The translations under genes and the position numbers were made by a program. From positions 186,001-250,000 of IMG/VR virus record IMGVR_UViG_3300035665_000001: DNA of 64,000 nt; one strand, written 5' to 3'. The notes beneath the pieces were generated by a model that saw only the letters and a program-made list of their open reading frames with translations, was not told the origin of the DNA and ran no database searches. This document shows, one piece after another, positions 4,491-39,602 of the stretch. How positions within the stretch are numbered: position 1 is the first letter of the stretch; each line of letters begins with the position of its first letter.

Positions 4491-4645
4491 GATTCTCCGA
4501 TCAACGATCCATTTATATTTGGATCTGCTACAATCTTTACAGATTGCATTAAATTTATTTTGTGGAAATCCACATTTTTATTTATATCGGATTTTGTGAA
4601 AAACTGCCTATCCATCCTAAGCCTAAAGTCCGAGGTCTTACGGTA
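4360..4645 (-). mobile_element. Non-autonomous IS200/IS605-family element (PATE-like) with both end hairpins and no transposase or TnpB
   Basis: Minus strand starts TAAGACCTCGGACTTTAGGCTTAGGATGGATAGGCAG (left-end-like) and ends AGAAGCTCCGTCCTTTAGGTCGGAGTGCTTCAC (right-end-like); the left-end part is repeated at 35831-35880 (44/50 identical). Confidence 0.6.
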
Positions 4646-4662
4646 GGAATGAATAAAATATC

Positions 4663-5136
4663 TCATAAAAAAAATATATTTTCGATCTGTGAATTTTTTT
4701 TTATCATTTCCATCCATTTTAATTCCAAAGCTATTTTATTGAAATTTTTATTGTTAGATAGAATTTCAGTTTCAAATCTCTTTATTTCCGATAATAGAAA
4801 AAAATTTGCGATTTCTCTATCCCATCTTATGTAGGTAAACAAATTTGGAAACCTTTTTAATACCTTGGTATCATTAATGTTAATTAGATTGATGTTGATT
4901 AGTCCACCATTTCCTTTATACTGTTGCACTTCATTATCTGCGTCATTTTGAGTTTGAATTATCCATTCGAGAACTCTTTCAACATTATATTTATCATTCC
5001 AACCTAATAATTCTGCATCACCTTCACGCATTTCATCAATGATTTTTAATGCTTCATGTGCTGGATCATATTTGCTGTTGTATTTGGTTTCATAAAAATC
5101 TTTGACTTTTTTCCAATATTCATTCGTATCTAACAT
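4663..5136 (-). CDS. Hypothetical protein with C-terminal tag
   Basis: 157-aa ORF ending SQIENIFFL. Confidence 0.6.
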   Translation of the reverse strand: MLDTNEYWKKVKDFYETKYNSKYDPAHEALKIIDEMREGDAELLGWNDKYNVERVLEWIIQTQNDADNEVQQYKGNGGLININLININDTKVLKRFPNLFTYIRWDREIANFFLLSEIKRFETEILSNNKNFNKIALELKWMEMIKKNSQIENIFFL

Positions 5137-11706: not shown

Positions 11707-12396
11707 TTATACGTGATATTTTTTTGATTTGATAGCACCATGTGTTCTCAAAGAGAATGTTTTTCCTTGTCTTCTCATAGCACTTATTTTTTTACCAAAC
11801 ATTCTACGAATTTTTTTATTTCTCATACGAATTTTTGATCTATTTTTTCTATAATTTAATTTTGCTGCTCTTTTTTCTGCAGATGTTGATTTTCCAAACA
11901 TAGATTCGTTGAAATCTTCATCTTCATCTTCATCACAGGTACATTCACCATTTTCATCTGGTTCACAGCATGGTTCATCTTCATCTTCATCCCATTCACC
12001 ACTGATATAATCTTCATTTTCATCAAAATCGGATTCTTCTACTTCACCACCACATGAAGGACATGCACCATCAACTAATTCTGCCTCTGTACCTATCCAA
12101 TCACCTTCAACACAAGCATATTCCATCATTTCATTATATTCATCATCATCACATGATTCACATGATTCCATTAATACATTTGCAAAAATTGATGAGATTG
12201 AATCCATCAATTTTGTTTTTTCTTTTTTAGTTAATGCATCATTTTTGAGCATTTCTAAAATTGTTTTAACTGCCTGTACGCTTCCATTTTTTGAATTTAA
12301 AGATCCCACTAAATCTTTATCTAAAGAAATTTTTGGTTTTTTACCCGCTTCTTTAAGATTTGCAGATGTTTTCATTAGTTCTCTTAAACTTGCCAT
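11707..12396 (-). CDS. Acidic, Cys-rich / basic-tailed protein, possibly prohead core or internal protein
   Basis: D/E-rich centre with CxxC motifs (CESC, CPSC), Arg/Lys-rich C-terminus, GAGG RBS, several TAAATA upstream. Confidence 0.55.
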   Translation of the reverse strand: MASLRELMKTSANLKEAGKKPKISLDKDLVGSLNSKNGSVQAVKTILEMLKNDALTKKEKTKLMDSISSIFANVLMESCESCDDDEYNEMMEYACVEGDWIGTEAELVDGACPSCGGEVEESDFDENEDYISGEWDEDEDEPCCEPDENGECTCDEDEDEDFNESMFGKSTSAEKRAAKLNYRKNRSKIRMRNKKIRRMFGKKISAMRRQGKTFSLRTHGAIKSKKYHV

Positions 12397-26719: not shown

Positions 26720-26881
26720 AATATGCCATTGGTAATTGAGTTGATACTCAAAAGTAAACAAAATCAGGTCCACAATAACCATACTTGAGATATTTAATAT
26801 ATTGTATGTTATAATCAATAATTATATTAATCTTCAAAAATTATTATCTGATAATAGACGTCAATTAAAGAGGAATTAAAA

Positions 26882-28017: not shown

Positions 28018-28327
28018 ATGCCATTACCGTTTAAAGTTGCTAGTAAATCAACTGAAAAACTGATGTCTTGGAAAGAAGCAGTAAGCTATGTTAAAACGAG
28101 ATGGGTGGTGGTTGGAGATTGCAAACTAAAAATGAAATGAATTGAATTTGATTTACAATTCCAAAACCAATTTTAACGAAAATGAATACTGGTCTGGCAC
28201 GGAGTTTAGTTCAACAAGGTCGTGAATAAAATTCTCCAACTGTTGTGGGTTCAGAAATCTTACTCATAAGTCTCACAGTTACTACATTAGAGCTGTAATG
28301 GATGTTGAACAAGTAAAACAAATCTAA
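28018..28327 (+). pseudogene. Lcl/DUF1566-like pseudogene
   Basis: MPLPFKVASKSTEKLMSWKEAVSYVK / GGWRLQTKNE / YWSGTE..YIRAV, with frameshifts and TGA at the conserved Trp. Confidence 0.75.
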
Positions 28328-29906: not shown

Positions 29907-30842
29907 ATGTCTAAAAAATTTAAACAAAAAATATCAAAATATATCAATGAGTTGGAATCACGTGGTGTCATTGTTGTGCAAGAAGGTGATTACATGGAAG
30001 ACGAAGATTATACAATTTATGATGTTGTTTATGAATATGTGATGAAATGTAATGACGATGAAATATATCATATCGTCCATCATGCTGATGGACATCTGGA
30101 GTTTACAAATGCAATTGAGGTTGATGTTTTAATTATTGATGATGCGTCAGATTTGTCATTATTATCTAATATCCAAGTTACATTAGATTTGTCGTTAGTG
30201 GAAGATGAAGATGAACCAGCTGATAACGATAGATTGAAATCTGTTGAAAATCAATTAGATAGATTAACACAAATACTATTGCCAATTTCTGAAAAATTGG
30301 ATAACTTGGAACGGAAATTATTAAAATTGAATACTCAACAAGCAAATTATTGTTTAAAATTTAATAAATTGCAGGAAGAAATAACTGGTATCCAAAAACA
30401 CCTAGTGGGTAGTAATGTGCAATCTCCAATTAAATCAAATATCACTTTGAAAAAATCTATTGATGATTTATTTGGTGAGGGTTATTACGATAGTCATCAA
30501 CAATTGGAAAATAGCGACCATCATCAATCGGAAATTAAATCAAAAAACAGTTTGACACGATATATTGATGATTTACTCGAGTTGGGTATTATATCGGCAG
30601 GTAAAAATTGTGGAAGATATTTTGATGGTACCTCAAGAATAATTCATAAAGTTAGTGATGAATATACCCTGACCCATTATAGTGAAATTAACACCTTTGA
30701 TGTTACCGAATTAAATTATGGTGCTGATACATTAACATTATATGGACAAAATGGTGCCTTTGGAGAACGTTATACCAACGAAGATTTTGAAACGTTTTTT
30801 AAAGAATCAAATTATCCATTAAAATTTAAATTAGCTAATTAG
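29907..30842 (+). CDS. Hypothetical protein with central coiled coil
   Basis: 311-aa ORF; heptad-rich segment RLKSVENQLDRL..LQEEITGIQKHL. Confidence 0.65.
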   Translation: MSKKFKQKISKYINELESRGVIVVQEGDYMEDEDYTIYDVVYEYVMKCNDDEIYHIVHHADGHLEFTNAIEVDVLIIDDASDLSLLSNIQVTLDLSLVEDEDEPADNDRLKSVENQLDRLTQILLPISEKLDNLERKLLKLNTQQANYCLKFNKLQEEITGIQKHLVGSNVQSPIKSNITLKKSIDDLFGEGYYDSHQQLENSDHHQSEIKSKNSLTRYIDDLLELGIISAGKNCGRYFDGTSRIIHKVSDEYTLTHYSEINTFDVTELNYGADTLTLYGQNGAFGERYTNEDFETFFKESNYPLKFKLAN

Positions 30843-30913: not shown

Positions 30914-31852
30914 ATGGACATTAAAACAGAAATTGCCGAATTAAAATCTCGCATTAATATATTAGAACAACAATTAATTGAATTACCAAAAGAATTTCCA
31001 TTTGAAATAGCTCCTAAAATAAGTGAGCGAGAATGTAAATGGGAAGATGCCATTAGCTATTGTGAATTTTTAGGCCATGGATGGAGATTGCCTTATTTGA
31101 ATGAATTGGATTTAATATATCAAACTGAAAATGATTTTGGTGACAATACCTACTGGTCCGATACCACGAGTGGTGGCATTTACGTATGGCTTCATAATAT
31201 GTCTAATGGAAATCAGTTCAGGGACAGTAAGGTTAATAGCAGATACTATGTTAGACCTATCCGTGATTTAGTTAAATCAAAACTACCATTCGAAATAGCA
31301 GATATATCAACTGAGATTAAATCTGATTGGGATAGTGCCGTAGAATATGTTAAAAGATTAGGTAATGAATGGAGATTACCTAGTATAAATGAATTGGATT
31401 TGATTTATCAAACTGAAAACGACTTTGGGGACAATACTTACTGGACCTCTACTGAGGGCAATGGCAATGGCGCATGGGGTCAGAATGTGTCTAATGGGAA
31501 TCAGTTCAACTACAGTAAGAACTTCGGTGGCAACTACGTTAGACCTATCCGCAATTTAGTTAAATCGAAACTACCCTTTGTAATTGCAGCCAAGGCGTTT
31601 GAGATTAAATCTGATTGGGATAGTGCAGTAGAATATGTTAAAACATTGGGTAAAGGATGGCGACTACCAACTAAAGATGAATTAACATTAATTTATCAAA
31701 CTGCAAATGATTTCGGTGACAATACTTACTGGTCCACCACTGAGCCTGATGGCGATTACGCCTGGATTCAGGATATGTCCTGTGGGTATCAGAACTTCCA
31801 CAATAAGTATGGTGGCAATTTCTATGTTAGAGCTGTTAAAGATATAAATTAA
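30914..31852 (+). CDS. Protein with coiled-coil leader and three tandem Lcl/DUF1566-like domains (putative DGR target)
   Basis: Three 96-aa (288-nt) units, each W..A..Y....G..WRLP...EL....YWS...W.......G.Q......YVR. Confidence 0.85.
   Translation: MDIKTEIAELKSRINILEQQLIELPKEFPFEIAPKISERECKWEDAISYCEFLGHGWRLPYLNELDLIYQTENDFGDNTYWSDTTSGGIYVWLHNMSNGNQFRDSKVNSRYYVRPIRDLVKSKLPFEIADISTEIKSDWDSAVEYVKRLGNEWRLPSINELDLIYQTENDFGDNTYWTSTEGNGNGAWGQNVSNGNQFNYSKNFGGNYVRPIRNLVKSKLPFVIAAKAFEIKSDWDSAVEYVKTLGKGWRLPTKDELTLIYQTANDFGDNTYWSTTEPDGDYAWIQDMSCGYQNFHNKYGGNFYVRAVKDIN
31151..31264 (+). repeat. DGR-like variable region VR-A
   Basis: 38 codons; aligns with VR-B and VR-C; variable codons mostly NNY. Confidence 0.7.
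31439..31552 (+). repeat. DGR-like variable region VR-B
   Basis: tac tgg acc tct act gag ggc aat ggc aat ggc gca tgg ggt cag aat ... aac tac gtt aga. Confidence 0.75.
31727..31840 (+). repeat. DGR-like variable region VR-C
   Basis: tac tgg tcc acc act gag cct gat ggc gat tac gcc tgg att cag gat ... ttc tat gtt aga. Confidence 0.75.
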
Positions 31853-31867
31853 AAAGATAATATTAAA

Positions 31868-32548
31868 ATGAATATCAATCAAGAAATTGCAAGAGTAAAA
31901 TATCGCCTTAGTAAATTAGAACAACAGCGAGATGAATTTCGGAGTGTGTTTTTACCAAACAATCGTGATAACAAGATTGATTGGAATTATAACAAAAACC
32001 GTGTTGATAAATGGAGACTGCCTAATGTCTCTAACTACGAAGTTAAAGAATGGTTAATTAACCTTGCATGCGGTGTGCGTTCAAAATTCGTGACCGCTGA
32101 TGAATTAATACATAAATTGCACTCATTGCCTACCGAGGTGCATGAGCGTATAATGTGGCACGCAAGTTTTGATGGTGGGCAATGTTTCGAAGATCTGTTT
32201 AGTGGTGATAGTTCACCTGTTACTGAATCCGCTGCAAGTGAATCGAATTTTGAAATAGCCCCAAAATCAACCGAAGTTAAAACTAATTGGTTCTATGCCA
32301 AGTTATATTGTATTGCTCTTAATATCGATGGAAAGACTGGTTGGCGTATGCCATCTAAAGAAGAACTAAATCAGATATACGAATCTGAAAATGATTTTGA
32401 GAAGGATTGGTATTGGTCATCCACTGAGGCTATTGGTGAACAAGGTCATGGTGATTATGCTTGGTATCAGCATTTTGGTCGATATCCGGTACCGGACTTC
32501 TACCAGAAAAATTACCGCAGATACGTTAGAGCTATTAGAGACATTTAG
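31868..32548 (+). CDS. Coiled-coil leader, unrelated insert and C-terminal Lcl/DUF1566-like domain
   Basis: MNINQEIARVKYRLSKLEQQ leader; FEIAPK..NW..A..YC..GWRMPSKEEL..YWSSTE..YVRAIR. Confidence 0.8.
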   Translation: MNINQEIARVKYRLSKLEQQRDEFRSVFLPNNRDNKIDWNYNKNRVDKWRLPNVSNYEVKEWLINLACGVRSKFVTADELIHKLHSLPTEVHERIMWHASFDGGQCFEDLFSGDSSPVTESAASESNFEIAPKSTEVKTNWFYAKLYCIALNIDGKTGWRMPSKEELNQIYESENDFEKDWYWSSTEAIGEQGHGDYAWYQHFGRYPVPDFYQKNYRRYVRAIRDI

Positions 32549-35094: not shown

Positions 35095-35382
35095 TTGGAG
35101 AAAACAATAACATTATCATTTGAAATAGCACCGAAAGAATATGAAAGATGGTTAAATTGGGATGATAGTAAATTATATTGCACATTATTAATACTAAATG
35201 AACAGGATGATTGGCGATTACCCACCTTAACTGAATTGAATCACATGTTTAAATCTGAAAATGATTTTGCAAGCACAGGTTATTGGTCGTCTTCTGAGGG
35301 CATTAGTAATGATTGTGGGACAGAATACTACGGTGGCAAGGTTTTTAGTTGTTATGTTCGTCCTGTAAGAACTATTAAATAA
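35095..35382 (+). CDS. Single Lcl/DUF1566-like domain with shortened variable region
   Basis: FEIAPK..NW..YC..WRLPTLTEL..YWSSSE..YVRPVR; the AW segment of the VR is deleted. Confidence 0.75.
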   Translation: MEKTITLSFEIAPKEYERWLNWDDSKLYCTLLILNEQDDWRLPTLTELNHMFKSENDFASTGYWSSSEGISNDCGTEYYGGKVFSCYVRPVRTIK

Positions 35383-35451
35383 TTAACAAACCATATTAAC
35401 TAGTGATTATTTTTAGTTGATGGTAGAGAATAATTAAAGAGATAACTTACG

Positions 35452-35742
35452 AATATCGAAATAAGTCATAAAGAATTTGAAAAAAAGTTAAACTGGTATG
35501 ATGGAATGAGGTATTGTCAATTATTAGATATTGATGGTAAGAAGGATTAGAGGATGCCTACTAAAGAAGAATTAAATGAAATATATAATTCTGAAAATGA
35601 TTTTGTCGGTTTCTTCTACTGGTCGTCTACTGAGTACAATGGTAACACCGCCTGGTATCAGGCTTTCTCGAATGGGTATCAGTTCAACTATTTCAAGAAT
35701 ACCTGCAACTATGTGTGTGCTGTGCGGAGTTCAACCATTTAA
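35452..35742 (+). pseudogene. Lcl/DUF1566-like gene with in-frame TAG, carrying GC-rich VR-D (35617-35727)
   Basis: NIEISHKEFEKKLNWYDGMRYCQLLDIDGKKD*RMPTKEEL; TAG replaces the conserved Trp; TAA upstream at 35443 and no in-frame start. Confidence 0.75.
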
Positions 35743-35764: not shown

Positions 35765-35880
35765 GAAAACCCAGTCCCTTTAGGGGTACGGTATAAATCA
35801 ACTGGGAAAATATCTTAAAGAAAAATAATTATTTTGTGGAGAACTACCTGTCCATCCTTAACCTAAAGTCCGAGGTCTTA
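35765..35880. mobile_element. Remnant IS200/IS605-type end hairpins
   Basis: GAAAACCCAGTCCCTTTAGGGG..TCAAC on +, plus a 44/50 copy of the 4591-4640 left-end-like sequence. Confidence 0.55.
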
Positions 35881-35909
35881 TGTCAGTAATGTTAAAAAAG
35901 GAAAAGAAA

Positions 35910-36557
35910 ATGAATATCAAAGAAGAAATCGATAATTTAAAAAAATTTATTGGGATTCATGAAAAAAGATTAGCTAAATTGGAACAACAATTATTAGAAT
36001 CAGAATCACGATTTGAAATAGCACCGAAGCTATTAGAAAAAGAAAATGTAAATTGGAATGAGGCTGTTAAATACTGTGAACTGTTGGGTAATGGATGGCG
36101 TTTACCATCTAAAGACGAATTAAAAATAATTCTTACATTGGAAAATGACTTAAACACAAACTATAGATATTGGTCAACAGCTACTAGGGGTAATAAAGAT
36201 CTTATTGCTTTTAATCAAAGTTTGTATAGAGGATATCGAGTTAGACCTATTAGAGATATTATTAAACCAAAATCATGTTTACCGTTCGAAGTTGCTGATA
36301 AATCAACTGAAAATAGATTATCATGGAATGAGGCTGTAAAATATGTTAAAACATTAGGTAAAGGTTGGAGATTGCCAACTAAACATGAATTAACTTTAAT
36401 CTATATTTCTGATAATGATTTTGACAAGGAATACTATTGGTCTAGTACAGAGTTTAATTCTACAGACGCTTGGGGGAAGGTCTTCGACGGTGGGTATGAG
36501 ACCACCAGCAATAAGGCTGGTAGTAACTATGTTAGAGCTATCCGTCCAATTCTTTAA
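35910..36557 (+). CDS. Coiled-coil leader plus two Lcl/DUF1566-like domains (VR-E 36435-36545)
   Basis: Two GWRLP..EL..YW..VR units; the terminal VR has mostly NNY codons. Confidence 0.82.
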   Translation: MNIKEEIDNLKKFIGIHEKRLAKLEQQLLESESRFEIAPKLLEKENVNWNEAVKYCELLGNGWRLPSKDELKIILTLENDLNTNYRYWSTATRGNKDLIAFNQSLYRGYRVRPIRDIIKPKSCLPFEVADKSTENRLSWNEAVKYVKTLGKGWRLPTKHELTLIYISDNDFDKEYYWSSTEFNSTDAWGKVFDGGYETTSNKAGSNYVRAIRPIL

Positions 36558-36674: not shown

Positions 36675-37867
36675 ATACACAGTGAATAACTTTTACAAAT
36701 TAAAAGGACCAAATCAAATGAAAATTTTCAAACAAACAACGAGTATTATTAGTATTATTTTTGCATTAGCTGTATGTTTATTTTCCGTATCAGCGTTTAT
36801 ACATGCGTTATTTGTAATTCCAGCTTTTAGAATGTACTTAGGCCAGATGATTGTTGTCTGTGGAGCCACTTATCTATTTTTCAAGGGTATATTTGAGCTA
36901 TTGTCAATGTATATTGATTATGATCAACACCGAAAATAATGGTAGACCATCGATTACATAATATGTGAATTAACTAACTTTTCAACTAAGGGGTGTGTTA
37001 ATGAACAACATTGATGAGGATATTTTTGATGAATACTATCTAAGTCGGAGTAGATGTACACAATAATCCACTAATTAAAATGTTTGAGGATGAAAAAAAT
37101 GTTTGAACCTGCAAAAGAAATGTTACATAAAGCAAATGAAAATTTTAAAGCACTTTTTGAAGAGAAGATTACTGAAGTTGGTCCATGTATTCAAGAAGCA
37201 CTATTTGATGTGGCTGCTAAGGGAGAGTATAAAACTACCATCATATTTACTGGTCGTTCACATCGCAATCCAATTGGTTGGATACCAAACAACTATGTCC
37301 ACTATAATGAAGAAGATACAATGCTCAGTGCATTAACTGAGTTCTTTTGTGAACAATTGACTAATGATGGTTATGGTGTAGTTACCCAAATGGTTAAAAA
37401 TGATATAATTGTGATAACGATTTTTTTTAATCCTATGAAGACAAATAAAATGGGTACAAATTTACATGCAGTAGGTAATGGTTACTAAGACGGATGAGTA
37501 AACGGAACAACAAATTATCTTTGAATTGTATCAAACGTCAACTAATGTTACCTGGGATATATTAACCTCAATTCAGAACAAACATATTTTGAGTGGGTGA
37601 TTACGTTTAGGATAAAGATTATGCCCCCAGTTTACGGAGATGATGATTATTTCTGGTAGTATCCACCAATATGGTATAATATAATTTTTGAAGGTGATAT
37701 GCGCATTTAATAGAGTTAGATAATTTTAGTACTAAATGATGAGAATATTGGATATATGGTTGAATTATATTTAACAAATTCCATCAGAGTTAGAGCTATT
37801 TAATATGGTGTGTCACATGGTGAGTGGGATTAGAGATAGATTATCAATTATACTGAGTAATATAAAA

Positions 37868-38644
37868 ATGAATATTAATGAAGAAATTGCTGAAGTAAAA
37901 TCAATTATTGCAGTTCAAGAAAAACGATTAGCTGAATTAGAAAAGCAATCAAATGAATTAACATTTGAAATAGCTCCGGAGTTATTAGAAAAAGGCAATG
38001 TGGATTGGTATGAGGCGATTAACTATTGTAAATTGTTAGGTAATGGTTGGCGACTTCCATCTCGGGATGAACTGAAAATAATTTATAACTCTGATAATGA
38101 CTTGAACGAAAACAGTACGTATTGGTCAGCTACAAGGGGTAATAATGATCGTCTTGCTTTTAATCAAAGTATGTATAATGGGGATCAATTTATTTCGGAT
38201 AAAAGTTTTAGTTCCAATGAATATCGAGTTAGACCGATAAGGGATATTATTAGACCAAATTTATCGTTTGAAGTAGTTAATAAATCGACTGAGATTCAAG
38301 TGGAATGGGATAGTGTGGATAAGCATTGTAAACCGTTAGGTTTATCAACTACCGATGAATTACCGTTTGAAATTTCTCCTAAATCATGTGAAAAACAATG
38401 CAATTGGTATGAAGCATTTGAATATGCTGAATTTGTGGATCAAGGTTGGAGAATACCCACAATAGATGATTTAAAGCTTATTTTTCAAAACCGTAAAGGT
38501 ACAAATATGGAGCTTGGTGTTTATTGGACAAAAAATGTATATGGGCATACCGCTTTAGGTATTAATATGCTGAATGGATTACAACAACCGTATGGTAAAG
38601 AAATGGGTAACAACTACATTAGGCTAATTCGGAATAAAAAATGA
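37868..38644 (+). CDS. Coiled-coil leader plus two Lcl/DUF1566-like domains and a truncated middle unit
   Basis: First domain is closely paralogous to 35910-36250; FEVVNKSTEIQVEWDSV is a truncated unit; last domain is divergent. Confidence 0.8.
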   Translation: MNINEEIAEVKSIIAVQEKRLAELEKQSNELTFEIAPELLEKGNVDWYEAINYCKLLGNGWRLPSRDELKIIYNSDNDLNENSTYWSATRGNNDRLAFNQSMYNGDQFISDKSFSSNEYRVRPIRDIIRPNLSFEVVNKSTEIQVEWDSVDKHCKPLGLSTTDELPFEISPKSCEKQCNWYEAFEYAEFVDQGWRIPTIDDLKLIFQNRKGTNMELGVYWTKNVYGHTALGINMLNGLQQPYGKEMGNNYIRLIRNKK

Positions 38645-39153: not shown

Positions 39154-39602
39154 TTGATTCAAAATTATCTTTAGTAAATGTAGAAAACGAATAGGTTGAA
39201 TTTAGTGATCATACTGTAATAGGGTTTAAAATGAGAAATGTGCAAGAAATAGCTGAAACTTTGATTAGCGAAGGTGTATTAGAATGGGTAGACAGTAATG
39301 AATTACCGTTTTATGAGATATTTGATGTATCTGATAATTATATTTTAGAACTTGATTACCTTGTTAATGATGATTATCCAATTAGATATAGAATTTGCTA
39401 TGTCAATATATCCGATGAGAAAATTGATTTTATCGGGTGTGAAGATGATAATATGCGATTACCACTCGATGGGTTGTTGGATGAATCAATTATGCATATA
39501 TATCAAAAAATATCAATTTAATATGTTGAGTGTTACAATCAATAGTTAAATTAGTCTTCAAAATTTGATGTCTACTGATAGACAAAAAAGAGGTATTGAA
39601 AA

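What the first reader, a model, noticed from the sequence alone, without database searches (positions are those of the whole stretch)
30914..31852. One gene with three tandem 288-nt lectin domains, each independently diversified
Seen: the VRs start at 31151, 31439 and 31727, an exact 288-nt period. The non-VR parts of the units are close copies (ATTAAATCTGATTGGGATAGTGC..GAATATGTTAAA), whereas the VRs differ heavily at NNY codons and share third-position patterns (t,t,c,t,c in A and C). Known: DGR VRs usually sit once, at the 3' end of the target. Inference: internal VRs were mutagenised before or after duplication, giving a trivalent combinatorial binder.
Basis: partly seen in the sequence, partly recalled or inferred. 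Interest (0 to 1): 0.75.

Follow-up and report, generated by a model that had tools for sequence, protein, structure and literature searches.

The report
Three-lectin phage gene with orphan DGR scars
A freshwater jumbo phage gene strings together three C-type-lectin-fold (Lcl_C/DUF1566) domains whose binding halves carry the codon fingerprint of diversity-generating retroelement (DGR) mutagenesis, but the phage has no reverse transcriptase or template repeat and the three regions are unchanged across samples, so they look like frozen products rather than live targets.

Summary
ORF 30914-31852 (312 aa) is an N-terminal helix plus three exact 288-nt units, each a Pfam Lcl_C (DUF1566) domain with a confident C-type-lectin-like fold.

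The "VR" halves are compositional islands. They are rich in NNY codons, with third-base C/(C+T) of 0.45 against 0.16 genome-wide, and poor in A-ending codons. Across 48 related units, the hypervariable codons vary at positions 1-2 but keep a column-specific third base. That third base matches the AAT/AAC codons of a bona fide DGR template repeat, so a DGR origin is strongly supported.

The DGR itself is missing:
- No RT and no TR in the 306-kb record (about 85% complete).
- No RT in 34 further viral records of the family; none in 78 flanked loci.
- In contrast, 75 of 80 control loci with a TR core have an RT.

The three VRs differ from each other at non-adenine and third positions, so no single TR wrote them recently. 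They lack the family's conserved VR 3' end. They are identical in contigs from other samples.

Best reading: a fixed trivalent lectin assembled from DGR-born cassettes. It belongs to a birth-and-death gene family that is shuffled and horizontally exchanged among jumbo phages. Trans or off-contig diversification is not excluded.

The parts
30914..31852 (+). ORF of 312 aa: N-terminal helix followed by three tandem Lcl_C (DUF1566) C-type-lectin-fold domains
   Evidence: PF07603, 117 bits, 3 stretches; AlphaFold2 model with mean pLDDT 91.4; Foldseek matches to Legionella Lcl C-terminal domain 8q4e (TMt 0.59, rmsd 2.8, 27% id) and to multi-CTLD receptors
30920..30982 (+). N-terminal alpha-helix (residues 3-23), heptad-like; the same leader is repeated at the start of paralogues (31860, 35907, 37860)
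   Evidence: DSSP on the model; repeat families D7 and D11. Oligomerisation is untested: the trimer prediction gave no answer
30986..31273 (+). Unit A (288 nt, 96 codons)
31274..31561 (+). Unit B (288 nt)
31562..31849 (+). Unit C (288 nt), terminal; followed by TAA and AT-rich spacer with no GC-rich 3' element
31151..31252 (+). VR-A (YW...YV, 34 codons). The most decayed: 9 of 17 hypervariable columns keep the subfamily's third base, and it contains AGG and AGA codons
   Evidence: count by hand (note)
31439..31540 (+). VR-B. Best preserved (14 of 17) and richest in AAY codons; differs at 12 codons from the copy in L010
31727..31828 (+). VR-C (11 of 17)
31868..32548 (+). Paralogue: same N-terminal leader, extra middle region, one Lcl_C domain with an atypical VR. 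A 96.6%-identical copy lies in an otherwise unrelated 327-kb phage
35095..35382 (+). Paralogue, single short Lcl_C domain (95 aa)
35446..35742 (+). Lcl_C pseudogene (approximate bounds). In-frame TAG at 35548-35550 replaces the conserved Trp of WR(L/M)P. Its VR (35617-35730) keeps a GC-rich 3' end like VRs of real DGR targets (L101, L104)
   Evidence: relatives' contigs read G at 35549
35880..36557 (+). Paralogue with leader plus two Lcl_C domains
37805..38644 (+). Paralogue with leader plus two Lcl_C domains
28018..28310 (+). Decayed Lcl_C pseudogene with frameshifts and stops (approximate bounds)
   Evidence: repeat families D6 and D8; three-frame translation; weak nhmmer hit

Best explanation
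The gene encodes a fixed, germline-encoded, three-domain lectin-like binder. Each 96-residue unit is an Lcl_C/DUF1566 C-type-lectin-fold domain. Its C-terminal half was originally written by DGR mutagenic retrohoming, in which AAY template codons become NNY codons. In this phage that machinery is absent, so the three variable regions are frozen snapshots at different stages of decay (A the most, B the least).

The gene belongs to a birth-and-death family: at least 7 genes or pseudogenes and at least 11 domains between 28 and 39 kb of the window. The family's diversity is now produced by unit duplication and fusion, mosaic recombination between paralogues, and horizontal exchange between jumbo phages, not by ongoing hypermutation.

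What is shown: the anatomy, the fold, the codon fingerprint, the absence of RT and TR, identity across samples, mosaicism and horizontal transfer.

What is inferred: that the fingerprint means past retrohoming; that the three different surfaces bind three different ligands (likely glycans or other surface molecules); and that the protein is multivalent.
For: (1) Family and fold. PF07603 matches three times. The model has pLDDT 91.4 and its best single-domain match is the Lcl C-terminal domain.

(2) DGR fingerprint.
- VR third-base C/(C+T) is 0.45 versus 0.16 genome-wide; Y-ending codons are 74% versus 52%.
- In 48 distinct units from the window and 29 loci chosen by protein pattern only, hypervariable columns have 1.5-1.9 bits of entropy at positions 1-2. 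Their third base is nearly fixed: T in 46/48; C in 44/48, 44/48 and 41/48. This equals the AAT / AAC AAC AAC codons of the TR in the canonical cassette L095 (target-Avd-TR-RT).
- In the window's own subfamily, only 5 of 304 hypervariable codons encode residues outside the AAY-derived set.

(3) No machinery.
- RVT_1 is absent from the record.
- No RT motif by regex.
- Brt/Avd tblastn is negative.
- No TR by blastn or nhmmer.
- No TR core with up to 2 mismatches.
- Positive controls work: BPP-1 Brt is found, and 75 of 80 IMG/VR loci with the TR core have an RT.
- 0 of 78 family loci and 0 of 34 other family records have one.

(4) Frozen.
- L113-L115 are 100.000% identical to the window over 14-15 kb.
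- Logan contigs from other samples (runs dated 2016, 2020 and 2024) cover VR-A, VR-B and VR-C with 0 differences (table 8).
- The 90% cluster of the protein has one member sequence.
- The VRs differ at third and framework positions.
- The A/B/C 3' ends are AT-recoded and unlike the conserved 3' end of terminal VRs.

(5) Shuffling and horizontal transfer.
- L010 is a two-unit mosaic.
- P0003 carries an A-like VR on a C-like scaffold.
- P0008 versus P0009 shows block mosaicism.
- There is a 96.6%-identical gene in a phage whose DNA polymerase is 25% identical.
- The window holds pseudogenes of the family.
Against: - The record is only about 85% complete, so an RT/TR cassette could lie in the missing part.
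- Only assembled contigs, not reads, could be laid. Minority VR variants would be invisible.
- Third-base C is retained at about 90% in the family, although paralogue scaffolds are synonymously saturated (dS 0.6-1.5). This is hard to reconcile with long-frozen relics in a 30% GC genome and hints at recent re-templating or recent import.
- VR-B differs from its L010 counterpart in a DGR-like way.
- The function is not tested at all.
Confidence: 0.6

Rival explanations
1. Live DGR target. The three VRs, or at least the terminal one, are still diversified by a DGR that lies in the unassembled ~15% of the phage genome, or that is supplied in trans by the host or a co-infecting element.
For: - The AAY-to-NNY fingerprint is well preserved, especially in VR-B.
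- VR-B is 4 times more diverged than the scaffold against L010, mostly at codon positions 1-2.
- CheckV completeness is 85%.
- Canonical DGR cassettes with very similar VR/TR DNA occur in comparably AT-rich metagenome contigs (L095, L104).
- Remote targets are known for Treponema (Wu et al. 2018).
Against: - No RT or TR in 306 kb, nor in five family records that are 92-100% complete.
- The three VRs differ at positions a single TR would homogenise.
- A/B and C have different, AT-rich 3' ends with no shared IMH-like element and no GC-rich downstream hairpin.
- The VRs are identical across samples.
- No TR with the subfamily's AT-type 3' end exists in IMG/VR.
Confidence: 0.2
2. Imported cassettes. 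The VR-bearing halves, or whole units, were diversified in DGR-carrying genomes. They were then repeatedly captured by RT-less jumbo phages through recombination at the conserved framework (YWSSTE ... YVRAVR) and by gene transfer. On this view the scars are young by import, not by local retrohoming.
For: - A near-identical Lcl_C gene is shared by unrelated phages.
- L010 sits in a different phage background, marked by the GCGAG hairpin that is absent from this genome, yet carries units A and B at 90% identity.
- Paralogues are block mosaics.
- The pseudogene VR at 35617-35730 is 82% identical to L101 and shares the framework of the VR in the RT-bearing contig L104.
- High retention of third-base C is easier to explain by recent arrival.
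Against: - No donor with a matching TR was found for A, B or C.
- The scaffolds of A, B and C have phage-like codon usage, with third-base C/(C+T) of 0.18. Whole-unit import would therefore have to be old or come from an equally AT-rich donor.
Confidence: 0.15
3. No DGR history. These are ordinary tandem paralogues whose ligand-binding loops diverged under diversifying selection.
For: - Total nucleotide divergence is similar inside and outside the VRs among A, B and C.
- No RT or TR was found.
Against: - Column-specific fixed third bases sit beside saturated first and second positions, in 48 units from about 30 loci.
- The third-base pattern is identical to real TRs.
- Residues are restricted to the AAY-derived set, with 5 of 304 exceptions.
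- NNC is strongly enriched in a genome with 8.5% C at third positions.
- Multi-nucleotide codon changes retain the third base.
Confidence: 0.04

Closest known systems
DGR target proteins of the DUF1566/Lcl_C class (category 'd', CLec2 VRs; type example Legionella LdtA) as classified by Wu et al. 2018 (PMC5758913)
   Same: Same Pfam family. Same placement of the variable codons in the C-terminal half of a C-type-lectin fold. Same YWSST...AW.Q...G.Q....K....VR.VR framework and the same AAY-derived codon pattern.
   Different: No cognate TR, RT or Avd in the genome. Two of the three VRs are internal. The 3' framework is recoded to AT-rich codons and serves as an inter-domain linker. There is no lipoprotein or secretion signal; the leader is a short helix.
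The single DGR target with three tandem FGE-sulfatase (C-type lectin) domains, all apparently diversified (Wu et al. 2018)
   Same: One gene with three tandem lectin-type domains, each with a VR.
   Different: That gene sits in a DGR cassette and its VRs match a TR. Here the domains are Lcl_C rather than FGE-sulfatase, there is no TR, and the VRs disagree at non-adenine positions.
Bordetella phage BPP-1 Mtd / Brt / TR cassette
   Same: A phage-borne C-type-lectin-fold protein whose binding face is encoded by NNY codons.
   Different: BPP-1 has VR, TR, Avd and RT within 3 kb, and one terminal VR. The window has none of the machinery.
Legionella pneumophila Lcl C-terminal domain (PDB 8q4e)
   Same: Best single-domain structural and sequence match.
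   Different: In Lcl there is a single domain following a collagen-like region. Here there are three domains in tandem behind a short helix.
Multi-CTLD receptors (mannose receptor, DEC205, PLA2R)
   Same: Tandem C-type-lectin-like domains in one chain, which is why Foldseek ranks them first.
   Different: An analogy of architecture only. rmsd is about 20 Å over the whole chain, identity about 10%, and the proteins are of eukaryotic origin.

Membership tests
Lcl_C / DUF1566 (PF07603) | Profile match above Pfam's gathering score | tested here: met
   117.1 bits versus 34.9, three stretches. Six-frame scan gives 42-43 bits per unit.
Lcl_C / DUF1566 (PF07603) | C-type-lectin-like fold | tested here: met
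   AF2 mean pLDDT 91.4. 8q4e_A TMt 0.59, rmsd 2.8 Å. Snake-venom and receptor CTLDs also match.
Diversity-generating retroelement (as a system acting on this gene) | A DGR-type reverse transcriptase in the genome | tested here: not met
   PF00078 search of the 306-kb record gives 0. Motif regex, Brt tblastn and the L104 RT protein are all negative. Positive controls work. Caveat: the record is about 85% complete.
Diversity-generating retroelement (as a system acting on this gene) | A template repeat homologous to the VR(s) | tested here: not met
   blastn at word size 7 and an nhmmer profile find only paralogous VRs. The TR core with up to 2 mismatches is absent. The pseudogene copy at 35617 is not a TR, because its mismatches to VR-B are not confined to its adenines (read).
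Diversity-generating retroelement (as a system acting on this gene) | TR-to-VR differences confined to TR adenines | not testable with these tools
   There is no cognate TR. With the L095 TR as a distant proxy the test is uninformative (p=0.1-1), while L095's own VR gives 12/38 versus 0/64.
Diversity-generating retroelement (as a system acting on this gene) | AAY-to-NNY codon fingerprint in the VR | tested here: met
Diversity-generating retroelement (as a system acting on this gene) | VR at the 3' end of the target, with a conserved 3' boundary (IMH-like) shared with the TR | tested here: not met
   VR-A and VR-B are internal. The A/B and C 3' ends differ and are AT-rich, unlike the conserved GTT CGY GCT GTT CGG end of the family's terminal VRs and of L095.
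Diversity-generating retroelement (as a system acting on this gene) | Accessory variability determinant (Avd) | tested here: inconclusive
   Only a tblastn with BPP-1 Avd was run (best E=2.8). Avd proteins are divergent and short.
Diversity-generating retroelement (as a system acting on this gene) | VR hypervariability within or between populations | tested here: not met
   Re-assemblies are 100% identical. Contigs from other samples cover the VRs with 0 differences. The cluster has a single member. Contigs hide minority variants, so this is not proof of absence.
FGE-sulfatase (PF03781) | Profile match with a domain-level hit | tested here: inconclusive
   25.2 bits versus a cut-off of 23.3, but no stretch passes on its own. 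This is a related lectin-type family, and the match lies under the Lcl_C match.

The most novel reading that the evidence does not exclude
Jumbo phages that encode neither an RT nor a TR keep arrays of DGR-type variable cassettes, including internal ones in multi-domain genes. These are kept fresh by a DGR encoded elsewhere: host chromosome, satellite or co-infecting phage. Phage genes would then be trans-targets of a foreign retroelement. Alternatively, a pool of DGR-born lectin cassettes circulates horizontally among unrelated phages as a shared, pre-diversified library.
Probability: 0.17. Interest if true: 0.85.

Novelty: new variant of a known kind. Interest (0 to 1): 0.55.

Why it matters
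DGRs are normally recognised by their RT, so surveys miss what happens to their products once the retroelement is gone or sits elsewhere. Here a whole family of phage lectin-fold genes carries an unmistakable DGR fingerprint in genomes without the machinery. This includes records that are 92-100% complete. The cassettes are duplicated, fused into multi-domain genes, recombined and passed between unrelated jumbo phages.

If these are frozen relics, DGR-made diversity can be banked as a hard-wired repertoire of binders. If they are still rewritten in trans, that would be a new mode of DGR action across replicons.

In either case, the column-specific third-base test used here is a practical way to detect DGR ancestry without an RT or a TR.

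Tried and rejected
1. The copy at 35617-35730 as the TR. Rejected: its mismatches to VR-B fall on all four bases, and it is a pseudogene's VR.
2. L095's TR as a proxy TR for an adenine-bias test. Uninformative, because it is too distant and offset by one codon at the 3' end.
3. A GC-rich hairpin (GCGAG-N4-GNTA-N4'-CGAGC) just after terminal VRs in L010, L017, L023 and L027 as a DGR target-recognition element. Rejected: the same hairpin is scattered through intergenic DNA of those phages on both strands and is absent from this genome.
4. TAG recoding to explain the in-frame TAG at 35548. Rejected: all three stops terminate long ORFs (141 TAA, 43 TGA, 33 TAG), and the TAG replaces a conserved TGG.
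5. A weak Brt hit at genome 263.5 kb. It is a KYGV-repeat protein, not an RT.
6. Single-protein search of IMG/VR for close relatives of the gene and of the phage's DNA polymerase. None were found, so no complete close relative could be checked for an RT.
7. Homotrimer prediction. No answer; not used as evidence.
8. Rfam scan of the window. No hits.
9. TR-like loose end in run X5. It matches the VR of L099, not a TR.
10. Pattern scans for a TR of the window's type in IMG/VR. None found.
11. The one metagenome scan found only L095's TR. That pattern fixed the Gly codon as GGG, so TRs with GGC or GGT would have been missed.
Full report
**Where we are.** The window is bases 186001-250000 of a 306,333-bp IMG/VR virus record. 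The record is linear, with a CheckV completeness estimate of 85% and 30.1% G+C. PHROG matches to DNA polymerase and a UvsX-like recombinase, together with the record's size, make it a jumbo phage. Sequencing runs that hold the region are lake or freshwater metagenomes. All three stop codons are used as stops.

**The observation.** ORF 30914-31852 (+) encodes 312 aa.
- Tandem Repeats Finder reports a 288-nt period with 2.5 copies.
- The repeat finder reports three copies spaced exactly 288 nt. The VR-like 83-mers lie at 31151, 31439 and 31727, with a fourth copy at 35617.
- In frame, the units are 30986-31273 (A), 31274-31561 (B) and 31562-31849 (C).
- Each unit matches Pfam Lcl_C/DUF1566. The whole protein scores 117 bits against a cut-off of 34.9.
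- An AlphaFold2 model (mean pLDDT 91.4) shows an N-terminal helix (residues 3-23) and three alpha/beta domains.
- Foldseek's best single-domain match is the Legionella Lcl C-terminal domain (8q4e: TMt 0.59, rmsd 2.8 Å, 27% identity). Multi-CTLD receptors match the tandem architecture.

**Divergence inside and outside the VRs.** Among the three units the amount of nucleotide divergence is almost uniform: 33-36% in the VRs against 24-39% in the scaffolds.

The kind of change differs:
- In the VRs, codon positions 1-2 carry most changes (24:10, 28:8, 28:9 against position 3). In the scaffolds the ratios are 33:19, 45:28 and 24:20.
- dN/dS is 0.6-1.5 in the VRs and 0.2-0.5 in the scaffolds.
- Codon usage in the VRs is alien to the genome. 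Y-ending codons make up 74%, against 52% genome-wide. C/(C+T) at third positions is 0.45, against 0.18 in the scaffolds and 0.16 in the genome's long ORFs (p=3e-8). A-ending codons number 4 of 93.

**Is this a DGR fingerprint?**
- A degenerate DNA pattern built on the VR framework found 12 metagenome loci. One of them, L095, is a textbook cassette: target with VR, a four-helix Avd-like ORF, an AAY-rich TR, and an RT (Brt E=3e-25). Its VR differs from its TR at 12 of 38 adenines and 0 of 64 other bases.
- I then collected VR units with a protein-only pattern, which is unbiased for third bases, from the window and from loci fetched by protein similarity. This gave 48 distinct units from about 30 loci.
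- At the hypervariable columns, positions 1 and 2 have 1.5-1.9 bits of entropy while the third base is nearly fixed and column-specific: T in 46/48; C in 44/48, 44/48 and 41/48. This is exactly the AAT / AAC AAC AAC of the L095 TR and of dozens of other TRs in IMG/VR.
- In the window's own subfamily (19 units), only 5 of 304 hypervariable codons encode a residue outside the 15 that AAY can yield. Third bases there are 57% C, against 8.5% genome-wide.

Ordinary divergence or diversifying selection does not produce this. I take a DGR origin of these segments as strongly supported. This is an inference from the pattern, resting on the established adenine-specific mechanism and AAC-rich TRs described in Wu et al. 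2018.

**Is a DGR acting here?** Every direct test was negative.
- No RVT_1 match in the whole record.
- No RT motif by regex.
- No tblastn hit with BPP-1 Brt or Avd, or with the L104 RT. The one weak hit is a KYGV-repeat protein.
- No extra VR-like copy by blastn (word size 7) or by an nhmmer profile. All hits are Lcl_C paralogues between 28 and 40 kb of the window.
- No TR core with up to two mismatches.

The methods do work. Brt is found in BPP-1, and 75 of 80 IMG/VR loci that contain the TR core have a DGR RT within the same few kilobases. By contrast:
- 0 of 78 IMG/VR loci of this protein family (±10 kb) have an RT.
- 0 of 34 further whole records do. These include five estimated at 92-100% complete, one of them a 372-kb genome with terminal repeats.
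- A TR with the subfamily's AT-type 3' end does not exist in IMG/VR.

**Are the three VRs co-diversified from one TR?** No.
- They differ from each other at 8-10 third positions and at framework codons. Retrohoming from a single TR would homogenise these.
- Their 3' boundaries are not shared. A and B read GTT AGA CCT ATC CGY and continue as an inter-domain linker. C reads GTT AGA GCT GTT AAA and runs into the stop and AT-rich spacer.
- Terminal VRs elsewhere in the family, and in L095, keep GTT CGY GCT GTT CGG.
- Measured against the subfamily's third-base consensus at 17 hypervariable columns, VR-A keeps 9 (and has AGG and AGA codons), VR-C keeps 11 and VR-B keeps 14 (by hand). The three are at different stages of decay, and the terminal one is not the freshest.

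**Variation between samples.**
- The exact 312-aa protein occurs on six contigs. The three with DNA from other assemblies (L113, L114, L115) are 100.000% identical to the window over 14-15 kb, including every VR of the family.
- Logan contigs of runs from other studies, dated 2016, 2020 and 2024, cover VR-A (X4), VR-B (X5) and VR-C (X3, X4) with zero differences (table 8).
- The protein's 90% cluster has one member sequence. A two-domain relative (P0008) is found with the identical sequence in 20 contigs read, and is listed in 36 index blocks.

Only contigs, not reads, could be laid, so rare variants are invisible. Still, nothing points to turnover.

**The one DGR-like contrast.** Contig L010 carries a two-unit gene that is 90% identical to units A and B.
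- Scaffold divergence is 5.4-5.6%, mostly at third positions.
- VR-A divergence is 7.8%.
- VR-B divergence is 22.5%, with 17 of 23 changes at positions 1-2 and several double changes that keep the third base (AAT/CGT, TCT/AAT, TAC/GGC, AGT/CTT).

Neither copy is the other's template. Both look like products of a common TR lineage. L010, however, sits in a different phage background: it carries an intergenic hairpin typical of the G001-type phages and absent from this genome. Its first scaffold is spliced from a different paralogue. The contrast therefore documents past retrohoming or cassette exchange somewhere in the family's history, not activity in this phage.

**The family and how it evolves.** The window holds:
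- the three-unit gene;
- a one-domain gene (31868-32548);
- a short one-domain gene (35095-35382);
- two two-domain genes (35880-36557 and 37805-38644);
- two pseudogenes: about 28018-28310 with frameshifts, and about 35446-35742 with TAG in place of the conserved Trp.

The same short helical leader starts several of them (D7 and D11). Relatives carry tandem arrays of ten or more single-domain genes (L023, L025, L062).

Block mosaicism is evident. P0008 and P0009 are identical through VR1 but diverged around it, with a wholly different VR2. P0003 has an A-like VR on a C-like scaffold.

ORF 31868-32548 has a 96.6%-identical copy in a 327-kb phage. That phage shares no detectable DNA with 20 kb of the window's core region, and its DNA polymerase is 25% identical. 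This indicates recent horizontal transfer. In that pair, and in L025, the VR of this gene is essentially unchanged.

**What remains unexplained.** Third-base C is retained at about 90% across the family. Yet paralogue scaffolds are synonymously saturated (dS 0.6-1.5), and the genomes strongly favour T and A at third positions. Long-frozen relics should have decayed further. Three explanations are possible:
- cassettes are imported relatively freshly from DGR-bearing genomes;
- a DGR acts in trans;
- the RT lies in unassembled sequence.

For this particular gene the below-average retention (9, 14 and 11 of 17) fits frozen relics best. For the family as a whole the question is open (note).

**Comparison with what is known.** DUF1566-type VRs are a recognised DGR target class, about 14% of DGRs, with Legionella LdtA as the type example. 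One target with three tandem FGE-sulfatase domains, all apparently diversified, has been reported (Wu et al. 2018, PMC5758913). The architecture is therefore a rare but known theme. What I did not find described in four literature searches is a phage-borne, RT- and TR-less family of such cassettes. That absence is weak evidence, because the library is limited.

**Verdict.**
- Best explanation (0.6): a fixed three-domain lectin assembled from DGR-born cassettes in a shuffled, horizontally exchanged, birth-and-death family.
- Rivals: a live target with off-contig or trans DGR (0.2); imported cassettes (0.15); no DGR history (0.04).
- Novelty: a new variant of a known kind. Interest: 0.55.

Noticed in passing
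window 31868-32548 versus L023:9299-9972: The neighbouring Lcl_C gene is 96.6% identical to a gene in a 327-kb phage that otherwise shares no detectable DNA with 20 kb of the window. That phage's DNA polymerase is 25% identical. This points to recent horizontal transfer between unrelated jumbo phages.
   Followed up: partly
L017, L023, L025, L027-L030, L034, L038, L010 (e.g. L010:2059): A 22-nt hairpin, GCGAG-N4-GNTA-N4'-CGAGC, with compensatory stem changes recurs on both strands in intergenic DNA of one group of related jumbo-phage loci. It is absent from this genome. It is probably a phage-specific regulatory or terminator element.
   Followed up: partly
window 35446-35742: Lcl_C pseudogene with TAG (35548-35550) in place of the conserved Trp. 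Contigs of relatives in other runs read G at 35549. Its VR keeps a GC-rich 3' end like the VRs of the contigs L101 and L104; L104 carries a DGR RT.
   Followed up: partly
window 28018-28310: A second, more decayed Lcl_C pseudogene, spread over three frames with stops.
   Followed up: partly
window 4591-4677 and 35831-35917: A 75%-identical 87-nt intergenic repeat. Logan contigs of two runs leave 35880 into the continuation of the other copy. This indicates either a rearranged variant or an assembly branch at the repeat.
   Followed up: no
window 26792-26859 and 39516-39583: 79%-identical AT-rich intergenic repeats that roughly bracket the region of small genes holding the Lcl_C family. They may be shared promoters.
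   Followed up: no
L104:2279-3106: A DGR-type RT ORF that lacks about 120 N-terminal residues relative to Brt. No TR is detectable in the 11-kb contig, although a VR-bearing target lies next to it. This may be a decaying DGR.
   Followed up: partly
window 29907-30842 versus P0012: In a relative, an N-terminus like that of the upstream 311-aa ORF is fused to Lcl_C domains. This suggests the two neighbouring genes are functionally linked.
   Followed up: no
L041, L062, L024, L045 and L095: Tandem arrays of single-domain Lcl_C genes are each followed by a conserved spacer of about 50 nt containing TTTAACTATTTAAC. The same motif follows the VR of the canonical DGR target in L095.
   Followed up: no
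window 11915-12024: Short imperfect TCATCTTCA-type repeats lie inside the minus-strand ORF 11707-12396, apparently an acidic low-complexity stretch.
   Followed up: no
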